A DNA stretch of 64,000 bases from Ascoidea asiatica JCM 7603 (taxonomy: Eukaryota > Fungi > Ascomycota). A program made the translations under genes and the position numbers. How positions within the stretch are numbered: position 1 is the first letter of the stretch; each line of letters starts with the position of its first letter. The stretch is from assembly GCA_001600695.1 (NCBI GenBank), contig BCKQ01000013.1, forward strand, positions 351,989 to 415,988. Reading direction: 5' to 3'. The notes under the pieces are model-generated. The model worked only from the letters and a program-made list of their open reading frames with translations, made no database searches and had not been told where the DNA came from. Of the stretch, positions 29,506-58,050 are shown one piece after another.

Positions 29506-30289
29506 TTTTTTTTTGAGCAATTTGAATTACCTTTCTATGAAACAGCACTGCAAGTCTTTAACACATCAAACAAAAGTGTAGATATATTTACTACCAAAAC
29601 ACAGGGGTCATTAGTTCTGTCTTTAGAGCAGATTCAAAATTGAGTGAGCTAATATTTAACCAGTTTAAGGTGATGAACAGCAACTAGGGAAATATAATCA
29701 CACTATGTAAGGATTAGTACAATATCCACCAAATGAATGCACAAATTTTTATTAAAAGCTAAGCTTTACAAAACACAATCATAACTTTTTTGCAAGAGGT
29801 CCTAAAGAACTTCAGTCTCAGACTCAATAACAAAAATCTCTAATTTCTGGTAAACATATGTTAATACATTCGAAAACTGTAGCTCCAAATTAAAGTAATT
29901 TTTCTCCAAGACACGTGATAAACTTTTTAGAAGCTATTAGCCTAAGGCACCATCAATTATTCCACACTTTTATGCACGGTTGGGGTAAAATGAGGTGTGC
30001 GTGATGCTGCATTAATACTTACCCTGCTTCTACATCTAAAAAAATATGTCATTATTATTAAAAAGATATCACACTCAAATTATAAACACTTGATAATTAA
30101 AACATAAAATTTATAAACGTTTTATTGAACGTACGGGACACGTTGACAGAAACGGCTCTTGAAACATTTATGACCTCATCAACTACAATAGACAATTAGG
30201 GTAATTTTTTAAAGAATTTTATTTTATTTTTAATAAAAAGTTACCTCCTTATTTTTTAATTTTTTAATAATTTGTTTTTATTTTTTTGC

Positions 30290-31620
30290 CATTTTTGTAA
30301 TACATATTTGGATCACTTGCATATAGGATACTGCATCAGTGATTTATTTTTATTTTTCAATACTTTTTTGTACCCCAAAAATGTATTTTTAGATACATTT
30401 TTGTGTTAGTTTTAGTATTATCATACACTTTTGGGTTACCTTATAATCCCACAATAATGCCGTGTTTCATTTTGTTTTCATGATACATATTGTCATCATT
30501 ATCCCAGCGGTTTACATTTTGAATATGTTATTGTACTGTTGTGATACAGTGTTGTATTATTGTCAACTTTTATGAAAAGTAATTAAGTTCAGATTTACTC
30601 TGTGTTCTTTTTTTTTTAAATGTTATTCTTATTATCAAATCAATTTTTACACATAAATTAATGGAAGGATTGCATCATCTACCTCAGTCATTCGCATTCA
30701 AGTTTGGAAAACATGATGTCCACTAGTCACATATTGCTCCAGAATTTCACATTTACATTGGGATGTTAATGAGACTTTGATTCATAGCTTTGCGTTTTCA
30801 ATTCAAACCATTTGTTTAACTCGCATAACCGATAGCGGCAATAATTCCCCTATCACATGTTCGTTTGTCAATGTTGACTTATGAGGTTCGACTGAAGATA
30901 ATTTCTTTTCATATAAAGGAAAAATCACATTTGATTAAACTATTAAAAATGTAAAGTTTGATTAAATTATTTTCGTCCCGCTAAAATTGAAATGCTTAAG
31001 ACTAACATATATAGTTCAATTATTTATTTTCCTTTCGATCGTCATATTCAATCAACAAAGTTTATATTTATTTCGCATTCAATTTTACTTCCAGCCAGTC
31101 AATATCAATTAAATTATCAAAAACAAATTCCCGGAACTATTTTTGAATCGTCCTAGAAACACATGAATATAACAGATAATCAAATATTAATTCACATTAT
31201 CATTGATCATCATCAAAACTCAATAATCTTGGAGCAGCACAATGGAGCTAGGAATTATTACTCAAAAAGGTATTACGTCATCAATTTATAATATTGTCAA
31301 AAATGAACTGGAGGAAGAAATACGATTCCTTAGCCGTCCTCCCCGTATTACGGTATACAAAATTTAAATAATAAAATTTACAATAGGAAAGCCAAATCCG
31401 AAATTGGAAAAATTTTAATTCATCCAACAAAGTAAACTGATAATGTTTTTCACATTTTTTTTGTTGAATCCAATGGACAGGTTCTATGAAAATTGAGTAA
31501 TGTAGCAAAATTAAAGGTAAGTATCATAACATTTCCACCCGAGGTTCGAAAAGATATTTCCTAAATTTTATTTAGTAATTGAGGTTTCAGTAGAATCTGA
31601 TTCAGATGAGCTTATTATGG
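30290..31620 (-). mobile_element. Probable old piggyBac transposase relic
   Basis: Correctly ordered degenerate motifs on the minus strand: IDDVITFLS (about 31280), FVFDNL (about 31120), SNM*LVDIM (about 30720, cf. YNxxMGGVD), then R*MMQSF..FM and a Cys-containing tail. Many stops, so the call is weak. Confidence 0.35.
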
Positions 31621-32094
31621 TAAATTAAATTAATTTTCTATTTGTTTCTACTTCTTTTTTGTTTATTATTATTTATTAATATTTATTACTATTTATTACT
31701 ATTTATTATTATTCATTATTATTTATCACTATATACTACATTGTTTTTTATATAAATATGCCCAAAATATCTTTTTTTTTTATTTCAACTTTAGTTTTAT
31801 TTTTATAAGGTTACCAATTCTTTATTCTTAATAAATATTAAATTGTTTTTTAAGTGAATATCAGTGGTTATATTTTTATTAATATACATCCATAGCCAGT
31901 GTTTAAAAGTTAGGTTAAGATATAACCTAACTTTTAGACTGCTAAAATTCATAACTTCATCCACCTAACTTTTCACGTGCCTAAAAAAAATTGCTAAGAA
32001 CGACTTCGAACGCTCTCAATCACTCGCTCAGCTGAAAGTGATTGCCACCACGTCATATCCTAACCAACAAATAAAAAGCAAAAAGCTTCATTTA

Positions 32095-32193
32095 TAAAGC
32101 AAAAAAAAGCCAAAAAAAAAGAAAGCCACTAACGGGAGGTCGAATCATACACTCCCACCTAGCGGCCGCTCCTTGCCACTACACTAAGGAACG
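32095..32193 (-). ncRNA. tRNA-like Pol III cassette, left copy inside hAT-1 (not a canonical tRNA)
   Basis: Minus strand reads GTTCCT-TAGTGTAGTGG (A box)-CAAGG-AGCGGCCGCT-AGGTGGGAGTGTATG-ATTCGACC-TCCCGTTA followed by T9 and T8 runs. Confidence 0.55.
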
Positions 32194-34766
32194 GTTTACT
32201 GAAATCACAAAAAGATTCCAGTGCTTCAGCCATAGAAAGTCACATGTTCAAAAGCGAAATCTATAGATTCAAATATTTTTGTTGCCATTGTTTTTAATAA
32301 AATAGTGTTATTTATATTAATAATCTAATATAGAAGCTACGATTTTTTTCAAAGTAAAAATCAAGCTACTTATTACTAATTCCTCTATTCAAATGGCCCA
32401 ATGGATTTACCAAAATTTCACCAAAAAAAATTACGAAAGATCAGAGCTTCCACAAAAGTTTACTGATCAAAAACCATCCTCAATTTTTAAGTTCAAATGT
32501 GGCTCGTGGCAAATAAATTATTTTGTAAACAGTTCTGTTGGGTATCAAGCTCCCATCAAACATGCAAAAGCTAGGCATAAAATCAGAAAATCATCTCCTC
32601 AAACAATTCAAAATAACCAAACTTATTTTCAATTATCAACAGCAGTTGCAGAATCAACTAAAATTGCACAATTTAATGGGATATGATTTTTAGAAAATAA
32701 AATTACTCAAACATCCGAAATAAAATTAAAAGAATATCTCCATCCCAAAGAGCAATTTGAAAAGGTTATTGTTAATATTTTTGCACAATGTCATCTTTCA
32801 TTCAACATAGCAAATCATGACTACTCCAAAAATATTTTGGAATTTTGTGGTTGTCCTTTTAAGGTATCTTTCTATAAGTTATCAAAACTTATTATAGACA
32901 GTACGAATTTGATATAGCCAATTAGAAAAATATCATATCAAATGTTGATGGCATTTCTTTAACAACGGATCTTTGGACTTGTCCTTCCAAAACGTCAATG
33001 TTAGGTGTAACAATGCACTTCTTAAATAGTAAACTAAAATCAAAAAAGTTTATTATTGGTTTTAAAAAATTTCATGGTCCACATTCAGGTGCCAATATTG
33101 GTGATGAAATCAAGAGGATAATGATTAATTTTGGTTTAGAAAAAAAATTGGTTATTATTACCGATGATAATGCTTGTAATTATTCTTTAATGTGTAGTTC
33201 TATTGACAAATTTCTAACTTCTGAAGGTTCGAGCTCTTCTATTGCAGCGTTTCTAAGATCGCTGAATAATGGCTCAGTTAGTATTAGATGCTTAAGTCAT
33301 ATTATTAATTTGGTTGGTTCTGATGGCTGTAAAAAATTGTTTGAAGATCATATCACTGAATTTCAAAATGGTGGTGGAGAAGTTAATTCTTTGTTTTCCA
33401 ATTTAAATGCCGAAGAAGTAGAATCTGAAAAAGCTATAGAATCAATTTCTACAGTTGAATCACTACTTCAAAAAGCCAAATATCTAATTAACAACATTTT
33501 GAAGAGTCCACAATCAATTGAAAAATTTGAAGAGATAGTAGAATCTATTTATGATGGTACTAGCAAATCCTGTGGGTGACTTGCAATTGGCAAGAGAAGA
33601 TGGAATTCAATTTATTTATCATTCCAGAGATTTTGTGTTTTCAAAGAAGCTTTTATTGAATTTGCTGCACAAAATTCAAATGATTATCAGCTTTATGATT
33701 CTGACAATAAAAACATTAAACAACTGACAATAAAAACATTACACAATTGTTTGAGGTATTGAAACCATTTTATAATGTAGCAATGGATATCTCTTATGAT
33801 AAAATCTCCATTCATCAAAACAATAGCATTTTGGATCATTTAAAAAGACATCTTGTAAATTGAGATCTTATAATGCAGATGAACATTTTTTACTTAGTTC
33901 AGTCAGCACTATTTACAAACAAATTAGAAAGTATAATAGTGAATTGGTAACAGAAAATTATTTGCTTGGTTTAGCATATATGTTAGCTGGAGTTGGATCA
34001 ATTGAAGAATTTGCTGCTGATAAAAAAGATATGTATAACTATCTTTTAGAAAATTCAAAAGAGTTAATTAGATCAATTCCAGACTAAAAGTTTGCTGAAA
34101 GCTCTAGTATGCTGTCAAGATTGAATTCATTAAATTTTACAGGAAAGCCTATTACTCAAAAAGCTCGCAATTTTAATGAGGTTGATGTTTTTATTGCTGC
34201 TGTCGGTTTTCGTGAACAAGGACCAATTTTTTACCAAAGTCCAGAAATTTTCTGGAAAGAAAATAGAGCTAGATTTCCAAAGTTATTTAAAATTGCCAGA
34301 GTAATTTTTGCTGTTCAAGGTAGTAGTGTTGGAAGTGAGCGGTTGTTTAGTTCTGATTGAATGGTGTACAATTACTTGAGAAATAGTGCTTGCTGTTGAA
34401 AAAGCTGAAAAATTAATTGAAATTTGTATTTCTTCAAAATGAAACTTTGAGGAAGATATTGAGTGGGAAGATTCTGAATCAGAAAATAATACTGACTATG
34501 AATTTGATATGTCATTTGAAATTTAGGTTTGCTTTTACAATCTTATTGAGCTGTTAATTGATTTTATCTTTTTTATTATTTTTGCCTTTTTTTTTTTTTG
34601 TTTTAGTTTTTAAATTATTTTTTAATTAGGTTATAGCTTTATAATAAATGTTTTTTTCGTTCAAATAAATGTTTATCTTTAGTTTAAATTGGTATATGGA
34701 CCTATCGTTACCGAGCTGGTAAATCTGGTTTTAAATGTTTTTAATTGTTAAGGATTTTAGCAATTC

Positions 34767-34868
34767 GTCCCTTAGTGTAGTGGCAAGGAGCACCAGGTGG
34801 TGCGGGGGGGGGGGGGGGTGTACGGTTCGAGCTCCCGTTATCAGTTTTTCTTTTTTTGGCTTTTTTTT
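34767..34868 (+). ncRNA. tRNA-like Pol III cassette, right copy inside hAT-1 (inverted relative to the left copy)
   Basis: GTCCCT-TAGTGTAGTGG-CAAGGA-GCACCAGGTGGTGC-G15-TGTACG-GTTCGAGC-TCCCGTTA followed by T5, T7 and T8 runs; clearly homologous to 32095-32193. Confidence 0.55.
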
Positions 34869-35839
34869 GGAGTATGTTATGCTGGAAGGTTTTCCCGCTT
34901 CGGCGATCTACAGGTGGCCCAGTGGATTAGTCTTCGTTTAACGAAGAACTGATTTGGTTTCGAATCGTGATTGAGGAAAAAAAAGTTGAACAGGTGAGAT
35001 GTTTCTCACTTTTCCTAGCTTTTTTGAAAAGTGGCCTGAAATTCCTGACTTTTTTAGGGGGGTTAGAAAAATTAAAAAACACTAGACATAATTGCCTTTT
35101 TAATATTGTTAGTGAGCTACGGAAAGAAAGGGTATGGCTTCGAAAAAAAAATTTTAAAACTACACTACAAGCATTGATGTAAATAGGTGGTCGACAATAC
35201 TTTAAATTATACTCTTGTTTTGACTTGTTGTATAACTCGCAACAATCCTACTCAGCCAATACCATAATCAATATTACCAAGTGTCGGCGAGTTAATAAAT
35301 ACCTGCTCAAAATGCTTACTATCAAAAACCAAAGGTACACCCAACGAAGTATAACAAACAAAAGGCGGTGATGCAAAAATTTAGATTTCTCTATTTAATT
35401 TTACTATTAAATATATTGATTCAAAATCTTTTTTTGTTTATTGAGTTTTAAGTCTAAAAATTAATCAAAAATCTGCTTAATTTACATGATAATTTGAAAT
35501 AATAAAAAAAGAAATCTATAAGTATTTATAAAGATTTTGAAGCCATACATTTGCCCAAAAGTAAGTGTTGCAATTGTAGCAAAAGTAATCAGGAAGAGAA
35601 TTGGTGAAATTGTAAAATTGTGAAATGTAATAATAAAAAATAATTTTCAAATTGTCAAATTAACCATTATTGTTTAAACATAAAAATAGATAAAAATAAA
35701 ACAAGATATTAATTAGTTAAAGATAGAACAGAATTGTAATTACTATATACAAAATATGAAGTTTCAATAGTCTTCAATGTAAAATTATAGCATGTTGCAT
35801 TAATTAAAGGAAATCCTTTTTTTTTTATTTTTAATTATA

Positions 35840-51198: not shown

Positions 51199-52057
51199 TG
51201 TTTTAGGTGATACTGTTCAGGACTAGGAGAAAAGAAAGTTTATATTATTCCCCCATATATCGTGGAGTCTAATGTTCAAAAGAAAACAACAATGGAAATG
51301 CTTGTTTTTTCGCATGAGAGAATCAAAATGTTATCATTGGGAAACCCATATGACCTTGGGTACACGCCAGTGCCCAAAACAGGGGCATCTAAATTTTTAA
51401 CGAAAAGCTAGGGTTTGGTGAGGTATATTAGTAAACTAGATGATTCGAACCATTTAAAAGATGAAAGCAATGGAAGAAAACGAGTGTAGATTTTTGGTCA
51501 AACAATAACTAACCACCTATCAGACTGAGGTAAAACACGAATAAATAGATAGAAAGTAATGATAACTGGTAATAAATATATATTAAAAGATAATAATAGG
51601 TAACATAAGTTACTGATTGGACTGAAGCATCTGCACTAATTTGTTTGAGACTCGTGGTTAACAAATTGGTAACTAAAAAAGTAAAGTATAACTTAAACCA
51701 AACCCCAGACGTCCAACGGCAGCATCTATACAGTAAGAGCTTTTATATAATTTTCCAAAGCAAAAAAAGTTGGTACCGAAGCGAGGGCTCGACATTATGA
51801 CAAAATGGACAGATATTTTACAGAATTCAACGGTTCCCGATGACATGGGATAGTCAGGCTCGGATTATGCTAAAGGCTACAATCATAAACAGGGGTAATG
51901 ATGCGGAGCTTGAGGTTTACTCTCCGGAACAAATTGTGTCAATGAAGGTCATCCGAAAGGTTCTTTTAAATGGCACCAAGCATGTGGATAAAATTGTTAG
52001 GAGCGTTTGACCTTTGAATAACATTGATATCCAAACACTAGTTGTCGTTGGTGGATT

Positions 52058-54720
52058 TACTTTTTAAATGTCAGGTTGGGTCCTAAGCTAACTTTTAACG
52101 TGATCAATTTCGTAACCTAACCTCTTAACCTTTCAACTGACTGCAAACAAAAGTTTGAAAAAAGGAAAATTACGATAGAGGCACTTCCAGCACTAACAGT
52201 TTTTTCCAAAGTTCCAAGCATTTTCTACTTTGCCGAACCCCAAACTCTGGATAAAAACAAACAATGTGATTCTTTATAATACAAAAATAGTCAAAAAAAT
52301 GCCCATAATGGGAGGTCGAAGAATACACGTCCCCAACAGAGCTTTGGCTCACTCAAAAGAACAAAAACAACATTACAATCGTGATAGAGTATGTGATTGT
52401 ATAGGAACATCCTATACTCTACCTTTTTGTCGTGGTTCAACCTTCGTAAAATGCTATTATTTGTTAAACAGAACATCAACATACTAACCAAAACACAAAA
52501 TGCTTGAATAATTTCACTATTAACAGAAATCGAGTTTAAAATGCAACAATGGATTTATAACAATTATATCGAAGATGTGTATGAAATGTGAGAGCATCTC
52601 AAAAATTCTCCAATCAAAAGCCTTCTTCCGTCTTAAAATTAGGATGAGCAACGTGTCAAAACAACTTGTTTGTTAGAACGTTTGTTGATTATCAAAGTCC
52701 AAAAAATTATGGAAGGTCGTCACACAAAATTAAGAACCAATCGTGCTAAGTATTGTAGAGACTTTAACGTATTTTCAATTACCAACAAGTGAATTAGAAT
52801 TCATTAGTATTTCAGACGACCATGAAAACTTATAGTTACAAAATAAAACTAGTTGTACATTAGAACCCATTTTTTAGCAACAGTCTAATCGAAAAGAAAA
52901 ATCTTCAAACATTATAGCTCTGTTTTTTGCTCAGTCTAAGCATTCTTTAGAATTGCAAACCAATAATCCTTTAAAAAATTTTTACCGTTTTGTGGATTCC
53001 ACTTTTTAGTTTCCTACTATAAATTGCCAAACCTAAAATATAAGCACTATGATTATGATATAGATTATGTTAAAAATATAATTTCGAATGCAGATGGCAT
53101 TGCGTTATCAAGTCATCTCTGGACTTCGGCTTACGAAATATTTATTTTTGGTGAAAATATGCATTCTTTAAATAATAAAATAAAAAGTAAAGACTTTATC
53201 ATTGCCTCTGAAAAAATTCATTATCCTCATTCAGGAGCAAATAGTGCAGATGAAATTAAAAACATAATAGTTTTTTTGGTTTTAAAAAAATTGGTTAGTA
53301 CTACAACAGATAATATGTCGAATACCTCGTTATGGTATGGCTCCATAGAAAGAGGTTTAAACAGGGAAGGTTCAAACTTTCCTGTTTCAACCTTTTTAAG
53401 ATCCTTCAAAAATGGAGCCTTTGGTATTAGATGTTCAACTCATAATATAAATTTCGTTCTTTCTGATGATTTCAAACAATTACTTTAGAGTGACCTACCG
53501 AAGTTCAACATTATGCTGGAAAACTAAACTATATGTTACCAATTTCAAATACTGGGAATCGAATGTAGCAGATGTTATTTGTCCCATTTCAGCCTTCCGC
53601 TGATTACCTCAAAAATAAAAACAGCTTATCAACAAAATTTTAACTAGTCTCCTGTCAGTTGCAAAATTGAAGATATAGTTGAAAATATTTATGAACGCTG
53701 AAGTAGATGTTTCAGGGCAGTTGGAATCGCAAACCGATGACGGAATTTTACTCATTTGGGTTTTCAGGATTGTTTGGTATTAAAAGAAGCATTTATTCAG
53801 TTTTCAGGTAAATATGCAACTAATTCTCAAATTGATGACTCTGTTGTTTGTAAAATTCCACAATTCGCTTAGCCTTTGAAACGTTTTTACGAGGTTACAA
53901 TGATCTTCCGCATGAACTTATAGGTATTCTTCAATACAATTGTATTTTGGATTATTTAACAAAAAATATCTAAAATTATATAAGGTCCTATAATGCTGTA
54001 AAACATTTTTGGGTTAGGTTAATTTAGATTTGGTACAAAAAAACAAAAGAATATACAACTGAATTGGTTACAGAAAATCAGTTAGCTCACTTACCGTACT
54101 TGCTAACTGGCGCCGATGCAAATTGGGAGTTTACAGCTGATAATAATCATAAAGCTAAATGTCTTTTAACAAATGTAAAAGAATTAATTGCTTCAATGCC
54201 AAATGAGGAAGCAATTACTAGTTCAAATATGCTCCTAAGATTAGAGACATTAAATTTCGGAGGAGATCCTACTAATAAAAATTTCCTTGATTATAATCAA
54301 CTTCGCTTTATGTTTTCATTGCAAATGTTAGGCTTGAGAAACGTTAAATTTTGTGTAAATGTGCACAAATCTTTTGGGAAGAAAATCAAACCCGGTTCCC
54401 AAAATCATACCAAATTGCTAACCTACTTTTTTCCTTTTAATCAACCAGTGTCCCAACGAAAAATAATTAAGTTTTACCCGAGTGGTTTACAAACTGTGAA
54501 GACTTACACTTTCTATTCAAAAATTATAAAAATTAATTGAAATTCTTATATCTCTACAAGTTAATTTTCGGGAAGATGTGGAGCTGGCTGAATCAGATTA
54601 TTGCGATGAAACCTTTTTTGACTCAAATCTATTTTTTAAATCCGATTTTGGTTTCACTTTGTTTATTCTATTTTTTTATTTTGTTCATTTTTTTTTTTTT
54701 TACTTGGGAATTGTTTTTTA
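52058..54720 (+). mobile_element. hAT-2: older, heavily decayed relative of hAT-1
   Basis: Left end resembles the hAT-1 terminus; ATG 52541 MQQWIYNNY (cf. MAQWIYQNF); ALSSHLWTS, HSGAN, TTTDNMSN, IRCSTHNIN and LVTEN are colinear with hAT-1. Right end not defined. Confidence 0.88.
52293..52362 (-). ncRNA. Decayed remnant of the tRNA-like cassette in hAT-2
   Basis: CCATAATGGGAGGTCGAAGAATACACGTCCCC aligns with CCACTAACGGGAGGTCGAATCATACACTCCC of hAT-1 at the equivalent position. Confidence 0.55.
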
Positions 54721-55073
54721 CTGATGTTATAGTCGAATACTGTAACAGGCATTGTGACAGGTTTAAGTTCCGTGCTTACACCGATTGAGTCTCGGCTGTG
54801 AGAAGTCAAACAACCTAACACTATAGGTGTGGTAGCAAACCACTCAATAAATCAAATACATCGCTAGCCCTCTTCCCATTCTATCCCAAACATCCTTGTA
54901 AAATTATAATTTTCCGCCCACTAATATACGTATTCCTTGGCGATTCCCTATATTGGTTAAGCCAAAAAAAATAATTGAACACTCAAAATAAGCAAACAAC
55001 CTATCAACAAATTAATAAAACAGAGTATTATAATCTCAATAAAAACGTAAATTAACAGCTTTCTATATCAAAG

Positions 55074-56500
55074 ATGCATCCTCCAGACAATCCACAAGCA
55101 ACAGATCGCACAACCAAAAGGTCGCAGAACCAACATATTTGAGAAACAATAAATGGTTCAACTGAAAAGCAACAAGAACAAAATCAACCAACCGAAGTTC
55201 AAGATGATCAATCAAAAAAACATCCAGATGATCAACGAACAGAAAACCAAAATAAATGATTCCCCAGAGGAACCAGCAACAGATACCAAGAACGAATCTG
55301 AATCGAACTACTCACCCTCAAAAGAAGAATCAAGTGATTAAAACTAAACCCCAGAAACTGACATAACTCCATCATTTCCTCCACCAGAAATCAAATATAT
55401 TAGATCAAAACAAGAACAGATGTGGATGGAATACAATACTGTGAATCTGAAATAGAAACGTTTAAAGGAATGATCCACCCAATTATTTTTGAAGGACAAT
55501 TATCAATTACTAGACAGTCTATCCAAAGAATACTCAATGCTATCGATGTACAATTTATTTCTTTATTATGTAAAAGAAGAGCTGATGAAAATATCACTTT
55601 ATTGCTCTGCTCAACAAAATTTGGCTATAGGCAAACACTAGATTTCTTTGCAGAATCAGCAAATAAGAATCAACCATTTAGTTCGGACTTCTTTTTCGAT
55701 CCTGAAGGTGAGTATTTAATTGGAATAATGGAATCTTCCATAATTACTCTCACCAATCCCAAAAATGAAAAAGGATGATTTTTCTACAATATTACAATTA
55801 TGAAAGCGTTTTTTATTAGAACCTGTAACAAAGAAAAAAGCTTTAGTTCCGTCCTACAACACAAAAATCCATATTCCTTTTCATAAAGGAGGTTGTAAAT
55901 ATCAAGTTTGATGCCTAATTTATGGATTATCTTATGGTCATGAATCTGAATTCTTTAAGAATTTAAATTTCATTCAACCGTTTAAACTTTGGATCAAAGG
56001 TATCATTTCAACTCTCGTAAACCATCAATTAATCTTCGACCATATTGATAGCAAAGTTCATGTATTAAAAACTGAACTAAATAAAAAACTAGCGCATGCC
56101 CATTCACAATTTCAGACAAGATTAGTCAAAATATTTACAACCCAGACTCCCTTTTACTGGTAAACTAATCAATCAAAGAATTTTAAGAGTTGGTATTGCT
56201 TAATATAAACATTAGACCTCCATGTTAAACATTCATTAGAACTGAATGGCCTCGCATTGTCCCACTATCCGAAGTCCCTGATATTATAACTGCATTTTTA
56301 AATCAAACAAATATAACAAATGGAACAACTGGAAGAGCCGAAATCATTAAGCTGTTTTGCAATACTCCAAGTGCAGTTTTCTTTTCAGTATTTCAAATAA
56401 GAAAAAATTATAAACCATAAATCTTACAATTCCATTTTTTTTACTACCAACCAATATACGTGATCCACAGGAATTACTTATATTGGTGAAACCTCTAAAC
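55074..56500 (+). pseudogene. Decayed A-rich ORF of unknown family
   Basis: ATG at 55074, a disordered N-terminus and ORF fragments 55153-55341 and 55422-55778 separated by frameshifts; no diagnostic motif seen. Confidence 0.4.
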
Positions 56501-57018
56501 TTTATTTAGTTTGCAATCAATTTTTAACCAATCAAATTCGAGCTATTATTATTTTTTTTACTTTAACTTTCTTCAGATTTCCCCAGTACAATTAGCCAAG
56601 GCTCCTATACAAAACTATCAAAACACAAAAACTGTATGAATCCTTTACTTCCCTTCAAATGTTTAGTTTTTTCAGATCTTTCTTTTATTACGGCGGAAGT
56701 ATATTAAATTTTGGTATATAACACTATCCAAATTTAAAATTTCTACTATTGGATACTTATTTTATTTTATTTCACATTATTGCTTTTATACTGTAATTAT
56801 AATATACTATAGATTCCTTTATCTTATTGTTGATCTGTACAGCCAATTTCCGAAGCTCCCCCGATCTTCTTGGGCAATCCTAAGTCATGCTGTAATTTTT
56901 AAAGTTTATAAAAATTACCTCTTCGAAATCTCAAACTGGAGTTTTTAACTCGAGAATGGGGCTGGAATGTGTGTTTTGTTCTCATTTTCTGTTATAAGTA
57001 GAAGTAATACCTTCCTTA

Positions 57019-58050
57019 ACGTTGGGCAAGCACAAGCAGCGGGTGATAGAGTTTCTGGTTAGAACTCCTATAATGGTGTTTTTTCTTTGTATCTAGTTCG
57101 CATCTATTGTTGAGAATATTTTTGCCGACTTTGCGGCCGACTAGTGGGTACTTAGTGTTTCTTGAAATGAACACCTGGTTGCTGATTGGGAGGAAAAATA
57201 TGACCATGTCAAATTTTTACTGACGTTTGCTAAGGTTTTGAAGAGTGGTATCAAATTCTACCCTTTTTTAGATGAGAATAGGAATTTTTAAAAGCACGTC
57301 GTGACTGTGTGCAGTTTTAATCCTTTGCTTGTTGATCTTAGGAACATTTTAATAGAAAAGAACAACTTGAAGAGGTTGCAAATGATAAAAAAAATTTATT
57401 CTAGGCTCCCAAACGAATTTATTACTGACATTTACCTAAATTTTGCCACTAAAAAGTCTTGCTTTACTTATTTCCATTACTTGGATCTTAGACAGCTTGG
57501 GAATAGAGAAAGCATTTTCACTTTTAATAAGTTACTTACGAAGGGTTCCGGTTTGTGAATGCTACGCTTGACAGACCGAAAAATATACTTTGTTTCTGGA
57601 CAAACAACAAATTCTACACGGATTCACCGATTAAACTATTGTCAACAGCCAGGTCTTATAAGTTTGTTATTACTGTCTAAAGGTGCATGTAAACCCATCA
57701 TGAGTATTACGACCACGATAATGAAGCTCTTAAATATTGGCTTCAGCGACTGAGTTACCGGCGAATAAACAGTCTCGCTCTAACGTGATTACACGGTGGG
57801 GATGATTGAGTATATCACCATTACTTCTTTGTTACTGGACAAGAAGAATTAGTCCCGGTTGCTATACAAAACCGTAGTCGAACGCCGTACAAGTAAGTAC
57901 AGTTATTCTCTCGTGATTAGAATTCAACTACAGAAAAAATGACGCTCTCAAAAGTTGCGGATGCGTTGTTTGTTTGTTCGGTTATTATGAGTGGGACCTG
58001 TACATTATATTTGTGTACAGGTACAGCCTATTTGTAAATAGGAACTTAAT
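57019..58050 (+). other. Endogenous totivirus-like (L-A/L-BC) RNA-dependent RNA polymerase relic; may extend to about 59200
   Basis: Ordered degenerate RdRp motifs: RWASTSSG (57020), KYDHVK (57196), FTYFHYLD (about 57470, motif A), KG-x7-ITT-x5-LN (57679, motif B), INSLALT*LHGGDD (57765-57806, motif C), TTEKMTLSKVADALFV (57927) and YLCTGTA (58008). Confidence 0.72.

What the first reader, a model, noticed from the sequence alone, without database searches (positions are those of the whole stretch)
31897..35084. hAT transposon whose transposase is bracketed by two outward-facing tRNA-like Pol III cassettes
Seen: two homologous units of about 100 bp (32095-32193 minus, 34767-34868 plus) form an internal inverted repeat. 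Each ends about 200-215 bp inside a terminus, and the DNA between cassette and terminus is not shared between the two ends. Each unit has a perfect A box (TAGTGTAGTGG, as in tRNA-Gln/His-type genes), a GC palindrome where the anticodon arm would be (AGCGGCCGCT versus GCACCAGGTGGTGC, different sequence but both self-complementary), a B-box-like TTCGA motif inside a GGG(A/G)G/CTCCC stem, and poly-T terminators. They do not fold as a cloverleaf, and the B boxes deviate from consensus (T at position 61). Known: tDNAs and TFIIIC sites act as chromatin barriers in yeasts and attract Ty integration; tRNA-derived heads define SINEs, but I do not know them as paired parts of hAT elements. Inference: the element carries its own insulators to shield its transposase from surrounding silent chromatin, or makes small Pol III RNAs toward its own ends.
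Basis: partly seen in the sequence, partly recalled or inferred. Interest (0 to 1): 0.85.

Follow-up and report, generated by a model that had tools for sequence, protein, structure and literature searches.

The report
Yeast hAT transposon with tRNA-promoter-like ends
A dead cut-and-paste (hAT) transposon in an AT-rich budding yeast carries, about 200 bp inside each end, an outward-facing 110-bp unit laid out like the internal promoter of a tRNA gene; the unit belongs to the whole family and occurs nowhere else in the genome, but it is not a tRNA and no data show that it is used.

Summary
Window 31897-35084 is a decayed hAT element with a hAT dimerisation domain, a TAGTG terminal repeat and 8-bp target duplications, which are proven on three derived MITEs. 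Two about 110-bp units (32100-32206 minus strand, 34753-34869 plus strand; 73% identical, E 1e-13) lie 200-216 bp inside the ends and face outward.

Every sufficiently complete family copy has them at the same places: C11, C4, C3, C10, C37 and a second diverged copy in this window. A profile search of the 20-Mb genome found no free copy.

Scored with matrices built from this genome's own tRNA genes, the A-box/B-box pairs reach 18-27 bits. No own-genome background position among about 235,000 starts reached 15, and real tRNA genes have a median of 32.

Limits:
- ARAGORN, Rfam and a tRNA profile see no tRNA.
- The "anticodon" GC palindromes are private to this copy.
- The boxes are no better conserved than their neighbours.
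- The MITEs moved without the units.
- All transposase copies are broken, and no RNA data exist.

The Pol III/TFIIIC reading is plausible (about 0.35) but unproven. The scan had noted this same stretch once before, in an overlapping window, and not on other DNA.

The parts
31889..31896 (.). Left copy of the decayed 8-bp target-site duplication (TCCATAGC). Its partner is 35085-35092 (GACATAAT); 4 of 8 positions match.
   Evidence: Read. The 8-bp duplications are clear on the MITEs L031, L032 and L033.
31897..31975 (+). Left terminal inverted repeat (CAGTGTTTAAAAG, ancestrally TAGTG...) and subterminal CCTAAC(TTTT) repeats. This is the part shared with the MITEs.
31984..32051 (-). L2, a weak outward module with degenerate A-like (GTGGTGGCA) and B-like (CGTTCGAAGTC) motifs followed by a run of 8 T.
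   Evidence: E 0.74 to the cassette profile. One search gives a consensus hit for the C11 copy. Its matrix score is below 5, so it is weak.
32100..32206 (-). L1 cassette. It holds a conserved leader (CAGTAAACCGTTCC), the A box (32176-32186), the B-like box (32136-32146) inside a GGGAG/CTCCC stem, and T9 and T8 runs (32112-32120 and 32101-32108 on the plus strand).
   Evidence: 81.7 bits; A+B 18.4.
32393..34526 (+). Broken hAT transposase gene. Open pieces are 32393-32686, 32998-33579, 33860-34087 and 34109-34360. There are stops, frameshifts and a 23-bp tandem duplication at 33701-33746.
   Evidence: D10; Dimer_Tnp_hAT, 2.8e-10.
34753..34869 (+). R1 cassette. It holds the A box (34773-34783), a copy-specific palindrome and a G15 run (34804-34818), the B-like box (34824-34834), and T5, T7 and T8 runs (34845-34868).
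   Evidence: 77.3 bits; A+B 26.7.
34915..34985 (+). R2, a second outward A/B module. It holds the A box TGGCCCAGTGG (34915-34925), a perfect 17-nt palindrome TCTTCGTTTAACGAAGA (34931-34947) and a B-like box GGTTTCGAATCG (34956-34967). The next T runs come only at about 35010-35027.
   Evidence: 21.3 here; 20.3 in the C11 copy.
35002..35084 (+). Right subterminal repeats and the right terminal inverted repeat (...AAAACACTA). This is the part shared with the MITEs.
52053..57297 (+). hAT-2, a second and more diverged dead copy with the same layout. Its left cassette is at 52293-52353 (minus), its transposase remnant at 52924-54732, and its right cassette at 57003-57085 (plus), 212 bp from the end. 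It also carries 2.1 kb of subfamily-specific internal DNA.
   Evidence: (E 9e-8 and 5.5e-5).
30142..31888 (+). Repeat X, a 1.75-kb dispersed repeat with TG..CA ends that abuts the hAT target duplication. It is not part of the hAT. A sister copy splits the right cassette of the C11 hAT copy.

Best explanation
Window 31897-35084 is an extinct autonomous hAT transposon of a budding yeast. About 310 bp at each end are conserved across the family. Within that stretch each end carries an outward-facing module with the layout of a type-2 RNA polymerase III promoter: a conserved leader, an A box identical to that of host tRNA-Gly and tRNA-Gln genes, a B-box-like motif 40-51 nt further on, and then oligo-T terminators. 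There is no tRNA body.

The most likely reading is that these are tRNA-gene-derived promoter modules taken into the element's ends. In the active ancestor they would have recruited TFIIIC, and possibly Pol III to make outward RNAs of about 90 nt ending at the T runs. That would keep the ends open or shielded from neighbouring chromatin and from transcription running into the element.

Shown:
- hAT identity.
- The position and orientation of the modules.
- Family-wide presence and absence of free copies.
- Promoter-like scores far above background.
- The left and right units were near-identical in the last active master. Left against right within this copy is 76% identical, the same as or higher than the same side compared between copies.
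- The modules are not needed in cis for transposition, because the MITEs lack them.

Inferred: the tRNA-gene origin, TFIIIC or Pol III binding, and any insulating role.
For: - The hAT dimerisation domain is present, with TAGTG repeats and 8-bp duplications.
- The inverted units match at 73% over 118 bp, E 1.4e-13.
- A whole-genome profile search finds the unit only inside hAT copies, at the expected side and strand. This holds for seven hAT-1-type cassettes plus the diverged C37 and hAT-2 copies.
- The 11-mer A box equals that of the genome's own tRNA-Gly(UCC) and tRNA-Gln(UUG). It occurs 17 times in 20 Mb, at least 7 of them in tRNA genes, against 5 for the reversed control.
- A+B matrix scores are 26.7, 21.3, 20.3 and 18.4. 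No own-genome background position among about 235,000 starts reaches 15, and the 5th percentile of real tRNA genes is 18.1. All hits are in the outward orientation and none inward.
- The block of left-right homology starts about 20 nt before the A box and stops right after the second T run, which is the extent of a Pol III transcription unit.
- A second module (R2) shares little with R1 beyond the two boxes and their spacing.
- The identity matrix is star-like.
Against: - No tRNA is detected by ARAGORN or by the Rfam covariance model, even on 151-nt slices, nor by an nhmmer profile of 33 own tRNAs.
- Local alignment to 42 tRNA sequences (a partial sample of the genome's tRNA genes) is significant for only one of seven cassettes.
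- The B-like boxes break the invariant C61, or carry an extra base.
- The left outer module L2 is weak.
- Among copies, the boxes are no better conserved than the leader or the outer subterminal DNA. hAT-1 and hAT-2 align at about 61% across the whole terminal 260 bp.
- Folding is better than shuffles only for one copy: z is -4.1 for the left cassette of this window and about 0 for the others.
- The 11-mer GGTTCGAGCTC also occurs by chance inside the ORF, near 33228.
- There are no RNA or ChIP data, and every copy is dead.
Confidence: 0.35

Rival explanations
1. The units are ordinary cis-acting subterminal repeats of this hAT family. They would be binding sites for the transposase (BED or DNA-binding domain) or for a host architectural factor, and would help pair the two ends. 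On this reading the likeness to A and B boxes is incidental.
For: - The units lie inside the roughly 310-bp terminal regions, the only non-coding parts conserved between hAT-1 and hAT-2.
- hAT elements of other yeasts have CG-containing hexamers such as GATTCG repeated in their 200-bp subterminal regions (PMC4316626).
- From my own knowledge, not tested here: Hermes subterminal repeats contain GTGGC, which also occurs in the A-like box here (AGTGGC).
- The leader CAGTAAACCGTTCC is as well conserved as the boxes.
Against: - MITEs with clean 8-bp duplications lack the units entirely and share only the CCTAAC and CACGTG-rich terminal 80-100 bp.
- The A-like and B-like motifs occur once or twice per end and in one orientation only. 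Typical transposase-binding repeats occur many times.
- The match to host tRNA promoter matrices is far beyond background.
Confidence: 0.25
2. The units are neutral passengers. A fragment of host DNA, for example from a tRNA gene cluster, or the relic of a once longer terminal inverted repeat, was fixed in the master copy and had no function. The boxes would survive or appear by chance.
For: - DNA transposons often pick up host fragments.
- tRNA genes in this genome sit in dense clusters 100-200 bp apart, like R1 and R2.
- There is no excess conservation of the boxes among copies.
- There is no tRNA fold.
- The family died out anyway.
Against: - A neutrally decaying tRNA pseudogene should not keep a perfect 11/11 A box while every other tRNA feature is erased.
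- The pair is present in subfamilies that differ by about 35-40% in DNA sequence.
- Left and right units were still near-identical in the last master, although the flanking end DNA is unalignable.
Confidence: 0.25
3. The units act on RNA polymerase II. The left one would be an upstream activating or nucleosome-excluding element for the transposase promoter (poly(dA:dT) tracts, about 190 bp before the ATG). The right one would be a terminator or an antisense promoter.
For: - The left unit ends 187 bp before the ATG at 32393, and the right unit starts about 230 bp after the stop.
- Both carry A8-A9/T8-T9 tracts.
Against: - Nothing requires the same 110-bp sequence at both ends for these two different jobs.
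- The spacer between the unit and the ORF is not conserved between subfamilies.
- This reading does not explain the box pair at tRNA-like spacing or the second module R2.
Confidence: 0.1

Closest known systems
hAT elements of budding yeasts (Rover, Roamer and their MITEs; PMC4316626)
   Same: - A single transposase gene with short terminal inverted repeats and 8-bp target duplications.
- About 200-bp subterminal regions with short repeats.
- Internal-deletion MITEs of about 350 bp.
- Mostly decayed copies.
   Different: - The paper's text, searched for 'tRNA' and 'Pol III', mentions no promoter-like module or internal inverted 110-bp unit for those families.
- The transposase here has no close relative in 1.8 billion representative proteins; the best hit is 28-33% identical.
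tDNA and TFIIIC chromatin barriers: the tRNA gene next to HMR in S. cerevisiae, ETC sites, and the B-box-bearing IR-L/IR-R inverted repeats around the fission-yeast mating-type region (from my own knowledge)
   Same: - Boxes of the tRNA-promoter type used without need for a tRNA product.
- In fission yeast, a pair of inverted repeats with B boxes brackets a chromatin domain.
   Different: - Those are host sequences at fixed loci, whereas these are carried by a mobile element.
- The B-like boxes here deviate at C61.
- No occupancy or barrier data exist.
tRNA-derived SINE heads, and the leader promoters of RPR1 and SNR52 (from my own knowledge)
   Same: A and B boxes at tRNA-like spacing in a sequence that no longer folds as a tRNA, followed by an oligo-T terminator.
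   Different: - SINEs are retroposed, dispersed, free-standing copies. These units have no free copy and sit only at two fixed places inside a DNA transposon.
- No downstream functional RNA is evident.

Membership tests
hAT superfamily DNA transposon | hAT C-terminal dimerisation domain in the encoded protein | tested here: met
   PF05699, E 2.8e-10, on the ORF at 34109-34360. Distant homologues carry ZBED1_RNase-like plus Dimer_Tnp_hAT.
hAT superfamily DNA transposon | 8-bp target-site duplication and short terminal inverted repeats | tested here: met
   The MITEs L032 (AGTATGAA on both sides), L031 and L033 (7 of 8) share the TAGTGTTTAAAAG ... AAAACACTA ends. This copy keeps 4 of 8.
hAT superfamily DNA transposon | Intact transposase reading frame (autonomy) | tested here: not met
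   The frame is broken in this copy. All five protein-level matches in the genome have stops or are fragments.
tRNA gene or tRNA pseudogene | Cloverleaf secondary structure recognised by tRNA models | tested here: not met
   ARAGORN finds 0 genes in the window and in all copies. Rfam RF00005 gives no hit at E<=10 on 151-171-nt slices of L1, R1 and R2.
tRNA gene or tRNA pseudogene | Sequence similarity to host tRNAs beyond the promoter boxes | tested here: not met
   An nhmmer profile of 33 own tRNAs gives no hit at E<=100. Local alignment is significant for the right cassette only (P 0.007), and that match is driven by the B-box region. Only a partial sample of the genome's tRNA genes was available.
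Type-2 Pol III promoter (A box, B box, oligo-T) | A box matching TRGYNNARYGG | tested here: met
   11/11 in L1 and R1, and identical to own tRNA-Gly and tRNA-Gln. TGGCCCAGTGG in R2 also matches 11/11.
Type-2 Pol III promoter (A box, B box, oligo-T) | B box GGTTCRANNCC at 30-60 nt, including the invariant C56 and C61 | tested here: inconclusive
   R1 has 1 mismatch (T at position 61), L1 has 2, and R2 has a 1-nt insertion here and 1 mismatch in the C11 copy. Spacing is 40-51 nt. The combined scores still exceed all own-genome background.
Type-2 Pol III promoter (A box, B box, oligo-T) | Terminator of five or more T shortly after the B box | tested here: met
   T5, T7 and T8 after R1; T9 and T8 after L1; present in all copies. 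R2 is followed by an A run, and its next T6 lies about 55 nt on.
Type-2 Pol III promoter (A box, B box, oligo-T) | TFIIIC or Pol III occupancy, or a transcript | not testable with these tools
   No RNA run holds the stretch, and read laying returned nothing.
tRNA-derived SINE | Dispersed free-standing copies made by retroposition | tested here: not met
   The profile search of the whole genome places every significant match inside a hAT copy.

The most novel reading that the evidence does not exclude
A family of DNA transposons built tRNA-promoter modules (TFIIIC or Pol III sites) into both ends as its own portable chromatin boundary or end-opening device. This would be a mobile counterpart of the B-box inverted repeats that bound silent domains in fission yeast. 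The modules might also have been a source of small end-directed Pol III RNAs.
Probability: 0.2. Interest if true: 0.8.

Novelty: new variant of a known kind. Interest (0 to 1): 0.55.

Why it matters
If the modules bound TFIIIC, this would be the first DNA transposon I know of that carries its own tDNA-type boundary elements. That would link two well-studied fields, Pol III factors as genome organisers and transposon self-regulation, and would offer compact natural insulator parts for yeast engineering.

If they did not, the case is still a useful warning. Box-level likeness to tRNA genes can be statistically strong without any tRNA being present.

Either way the family is extinct here, so the biology has to be tested on rebuilt cassettes or on active relatives.

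Tried and rejected
- **tRNA detection.** ARAGORN, Rfam (whole window at gathering thresholds, 5 kb, and 151-171-nt slices at E<=10), an nhmmer profile of own tRNAs, and Smith-Waterman alignment against 42 tRNA sequences gave no tRNA.
- **Covariation and folding.** The consensus has two hairpins with the boxes in their loops, but there are few compensatory changes and only one copy folds better than shuffles. Because all copies are dead and drifting, covariation and box conservation say little.
- **Relatives.** The representative-protein search found only hATs 28-33% identical. Two of them, fetched with flanks, have no cassette and no tRNA. An exact 20-mer search of metagenome contigs gave 0 hits.
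- **Retroelement targeting as a natural reporter of Pol III activity.** Repeat X splits one cassette and abuts this copy, but its other copies are not near the listed tRNA genes, so this idea was dropped.
- **The 2.1 kb before the hAT-2 right cassette.** It looked like an insertion but is subfamily-internal DNA.
- **Homology of the outer modules L2 and R2 to the cassettes.** The profile does not support it.
- **Literature.** Four full-text searches found no report of A/B boxes in DNA-transposon ends.
Full report
**Host and element.** The window comes from a 20.3-Mb, roughly 28% GC genome. Its genes are fungal and nearly intron-free, including a Zn2Cys6 factor with an ERT1/acuK PAS domain, an SPX transporter and a cohesin STAG subunit, so it is a budding yeast.

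Positions 31897-35084 are a decayed hAT transposon:
- The ORF piece at 34109-34360 carries the hAT dimerisation domain (E 2.8e-10).
- The reading frame from the ATG at 32393 to about 34526 is broken by stops, frameshifts and a 23-bp tandem duplication.
- Three MITEs of 320-395 bp elsewhere in the genome share the terminal 76-83 bp. They show the true ends (TAGTGTTTAAAAG ... AAAACACTA) with 8-bp duplications that are perfect or match at 7 of 8.

At this copy the duplication has decayed to 4 of 8.

**The two units.** BLAST and the repeat finder pair 32100-32206 with 34753-34869 as an inverted repeat, 73% identical over 118 bp (E 1.4e-13). The units end 203 and 216 bp from the termini and read outward. 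The outer DNA of the two ends does not align: local score 19 against 17.7 +/- 2.5 for shuffles.

Each unit has these parts, in order:
- a conserved leader, CAGTAAACCGTTCC;
- TAGTGTAGTGG;
- a variable middle;
- GGGAG...[G(G/A)TTCGA]...CTCCC;
- two T runs separated by GGC.

**Family-wide presence and no free copies.** Homologous units sit at the same place and in the same orientation in the copies on C11 (both ends), C4 (right), C3 and C10 (left).

A sequence profile built from six units and run over the whole genome found those, plus:
- the interrupted right unit of C11;
- the right unit of the diverged C37 copy;
- both units of a second diverged copy in this window, hAT-2 at about 52053-57297, with its left unit at 52293-52353 (minus) and its right unit at 57003-57085 (plus), 212 bp from its end.

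Nothing convincing was found elsewhere. The one marginal match outside a known copy, C11:627.9 kb (E 0.02), could not be fetched and read. The MITEs have no unit.

**How tRNA-like are they?** As tRNAs, not at all:
- ARAGORN finds nothing in the window or in any copy.
- Rfam's tRNA model gives no hit at E<=10, even when only 151 nt are searched.
- An nhmmer profile of 33 of the genome's own tRNAs finds nothing at E<=100.
- Local alignment to 42 tRNA sequences from this genome beats shuffles for the right unit only.

As promoters, the likeness is strong. The 11-mer A box is identical to that of the genome's tRNA-Gly(UCC) and tRNA-Gln(UUG) genes. I built A-box and B-box weight matrices from 41 own tRNA genes and scored the best A+B pair at 30-62 nt spacing:

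| Sequence | A+B score |
|---|---|
| Real tRNA genes, median | 32 |
| Real tRNA genes, 5th percentile | 18.1 |
| R1 (this window) | 26.7 |
| L1 (this window) | 18.4 |
| Own-genome background, about 235,000 start positions | none reaches 15 |
| Best background overall (a locus from another fungus) | 18.5 |

The background comprised the rest of the window, the other TE loci and the tRNA flanks. Hits occur only on the outward strand.

**A second module.** It lies in the right outer segment: TGGCCCAGTGG at 34915, a perfect 17-nt palindrome at 34931-34947, and GGTTTCGAATCG at 34956. It scores 21.3 here and 20.3 in the C11 copy, where the B box reads GGTTCGAATCG. The profile does not relate it to R1, so the two share little beyond the boxes and their spacing. 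A matching left outer module (31984-32051) is weak.

**What the comparisons can and cannot say.** The copies differ by 20-50% and no transposase is intact anywhere in the assembly. Differences among copies are therefore mostly neutral decay. This explains why the boxes are no better kept than the leader or the outer subterminal DNA, and why covariation is uninformative.

More telling points:
- Between hAT-1 and hAT-2, the only alignable non-coding DNA is the terminal 260 bp or so on each side, up to and into the cassette. The spacer towards the ORF is not alignable.
- The left and right units of one copy are as alike (76%) as the same side in different copies (62-71%). The master element therefore carried two near-identical units, although the surrounding end DNA is unrelated.
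- The block of left-right homology runs from about 20 nt before the A box to just past the second T run, which is the extent of a Pol III transcription unit.
- The MITEs transposed without the units, so the units are not required in cis.

**Reading.** I put about 0.35 on tRNA-gene-derived promoter modules that recruited TFIIIC, and perhaps Pol III, in the active ancestor.

The rivals:
- Ordinary subterminal cis elements bound by the transposase or a host factor (0.25). Yeast Rover1 elements have GATTCG hexamers in their subterminal regions (PMC4316626).
- Neutral captured DNA or a relic of a long terminal repeat (0.25).
- A Pol II promoter or terminator role (0.1).

Points against the Pol III reading are the deviant B boxes (T at position 61, or an extra base), the weak L2 module, the chance recurrence of GGTTCGAGCTC inside the ORF, and the complete lack of expression or occupancy data.

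- No RNA run exists for the organism.
- No close relatives of the transposase exist in the protein library. Two distant hATs fetched with flanks lack any cassette.
- Four literature searches found no precedent for A/B boxes in DNA-transposon ends.

**Verdict.** The element is a new variant of a known kind, a hAT family with promoter-like end modules. Interest is moderate to high and depends on a TFIIIC/Pol III occupancy test.

Noticed in passing
window 30142-31888; L028 2660-4378: Repeat X is 1.75 kb with TG..CA ends and a roughly 200-aa ORF in the C11 copy. It has at least 15 copies, two of them 99% identical on C11. One copy abuts the hAT target duplication here. Another split the right cassette of the C11 hAT copy at its B-like box, with a 4-5-bp duplication (GTGC).
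   Followed up: partly
window 30016-30138: A repeat of about 100-120 bp is present in at least 25 places in the genome at about 80% identity, directly left of repeat X. It may be a solo-LTR fragment.
   Followed up: no
L031 4292-4636; L032 3737-4011; L033 3755-4099: The hAT MITEs have clean 8-bp duplications, and L031 and L033 look almost identical by eye. They therefore probably moved long after the full-length copies decayed, yet no intact transposase is present in the assembly.
   Followed up: partly
window 54760-57000: The diverged copy hAT-2 carries 2.1 kb of extra internal DNA between the transposase remnant and the right cassette. It is shared at 70-76% with C3:27446-29654, so it is subfamily cargo of unknown content.
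   Followed up: partly
window 31901-31939 and 35040-35070: The subterminal repeats are CCTAAC(TTTT)/AGGTTAGG, which resemble a TTAGG-type telomere motif, together with CACGTG. A 17-nt near-perfect palindrome sits just inside the left end.
   Followed up: no
window 34804-34818: A run of 15 G lies in the right cassette and is absent from all other copies. It could not be checked against reads because read laying returned nothing.
   Followed up: no
L070, L071, L072 (GCA_003357145.1): A distant fungal hAT (P0002, 949 aa) occurs in three places. Each time it is preceded by the same histone-fold gene and a 316-aa gene, so it may be a cargo-carrying hAT.
   Followed up: no
L051, L049, L055, L056: tRNA genes of this genome sit in dense mixed clusters, up to five in 1.5 kb.
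   Followed up: no
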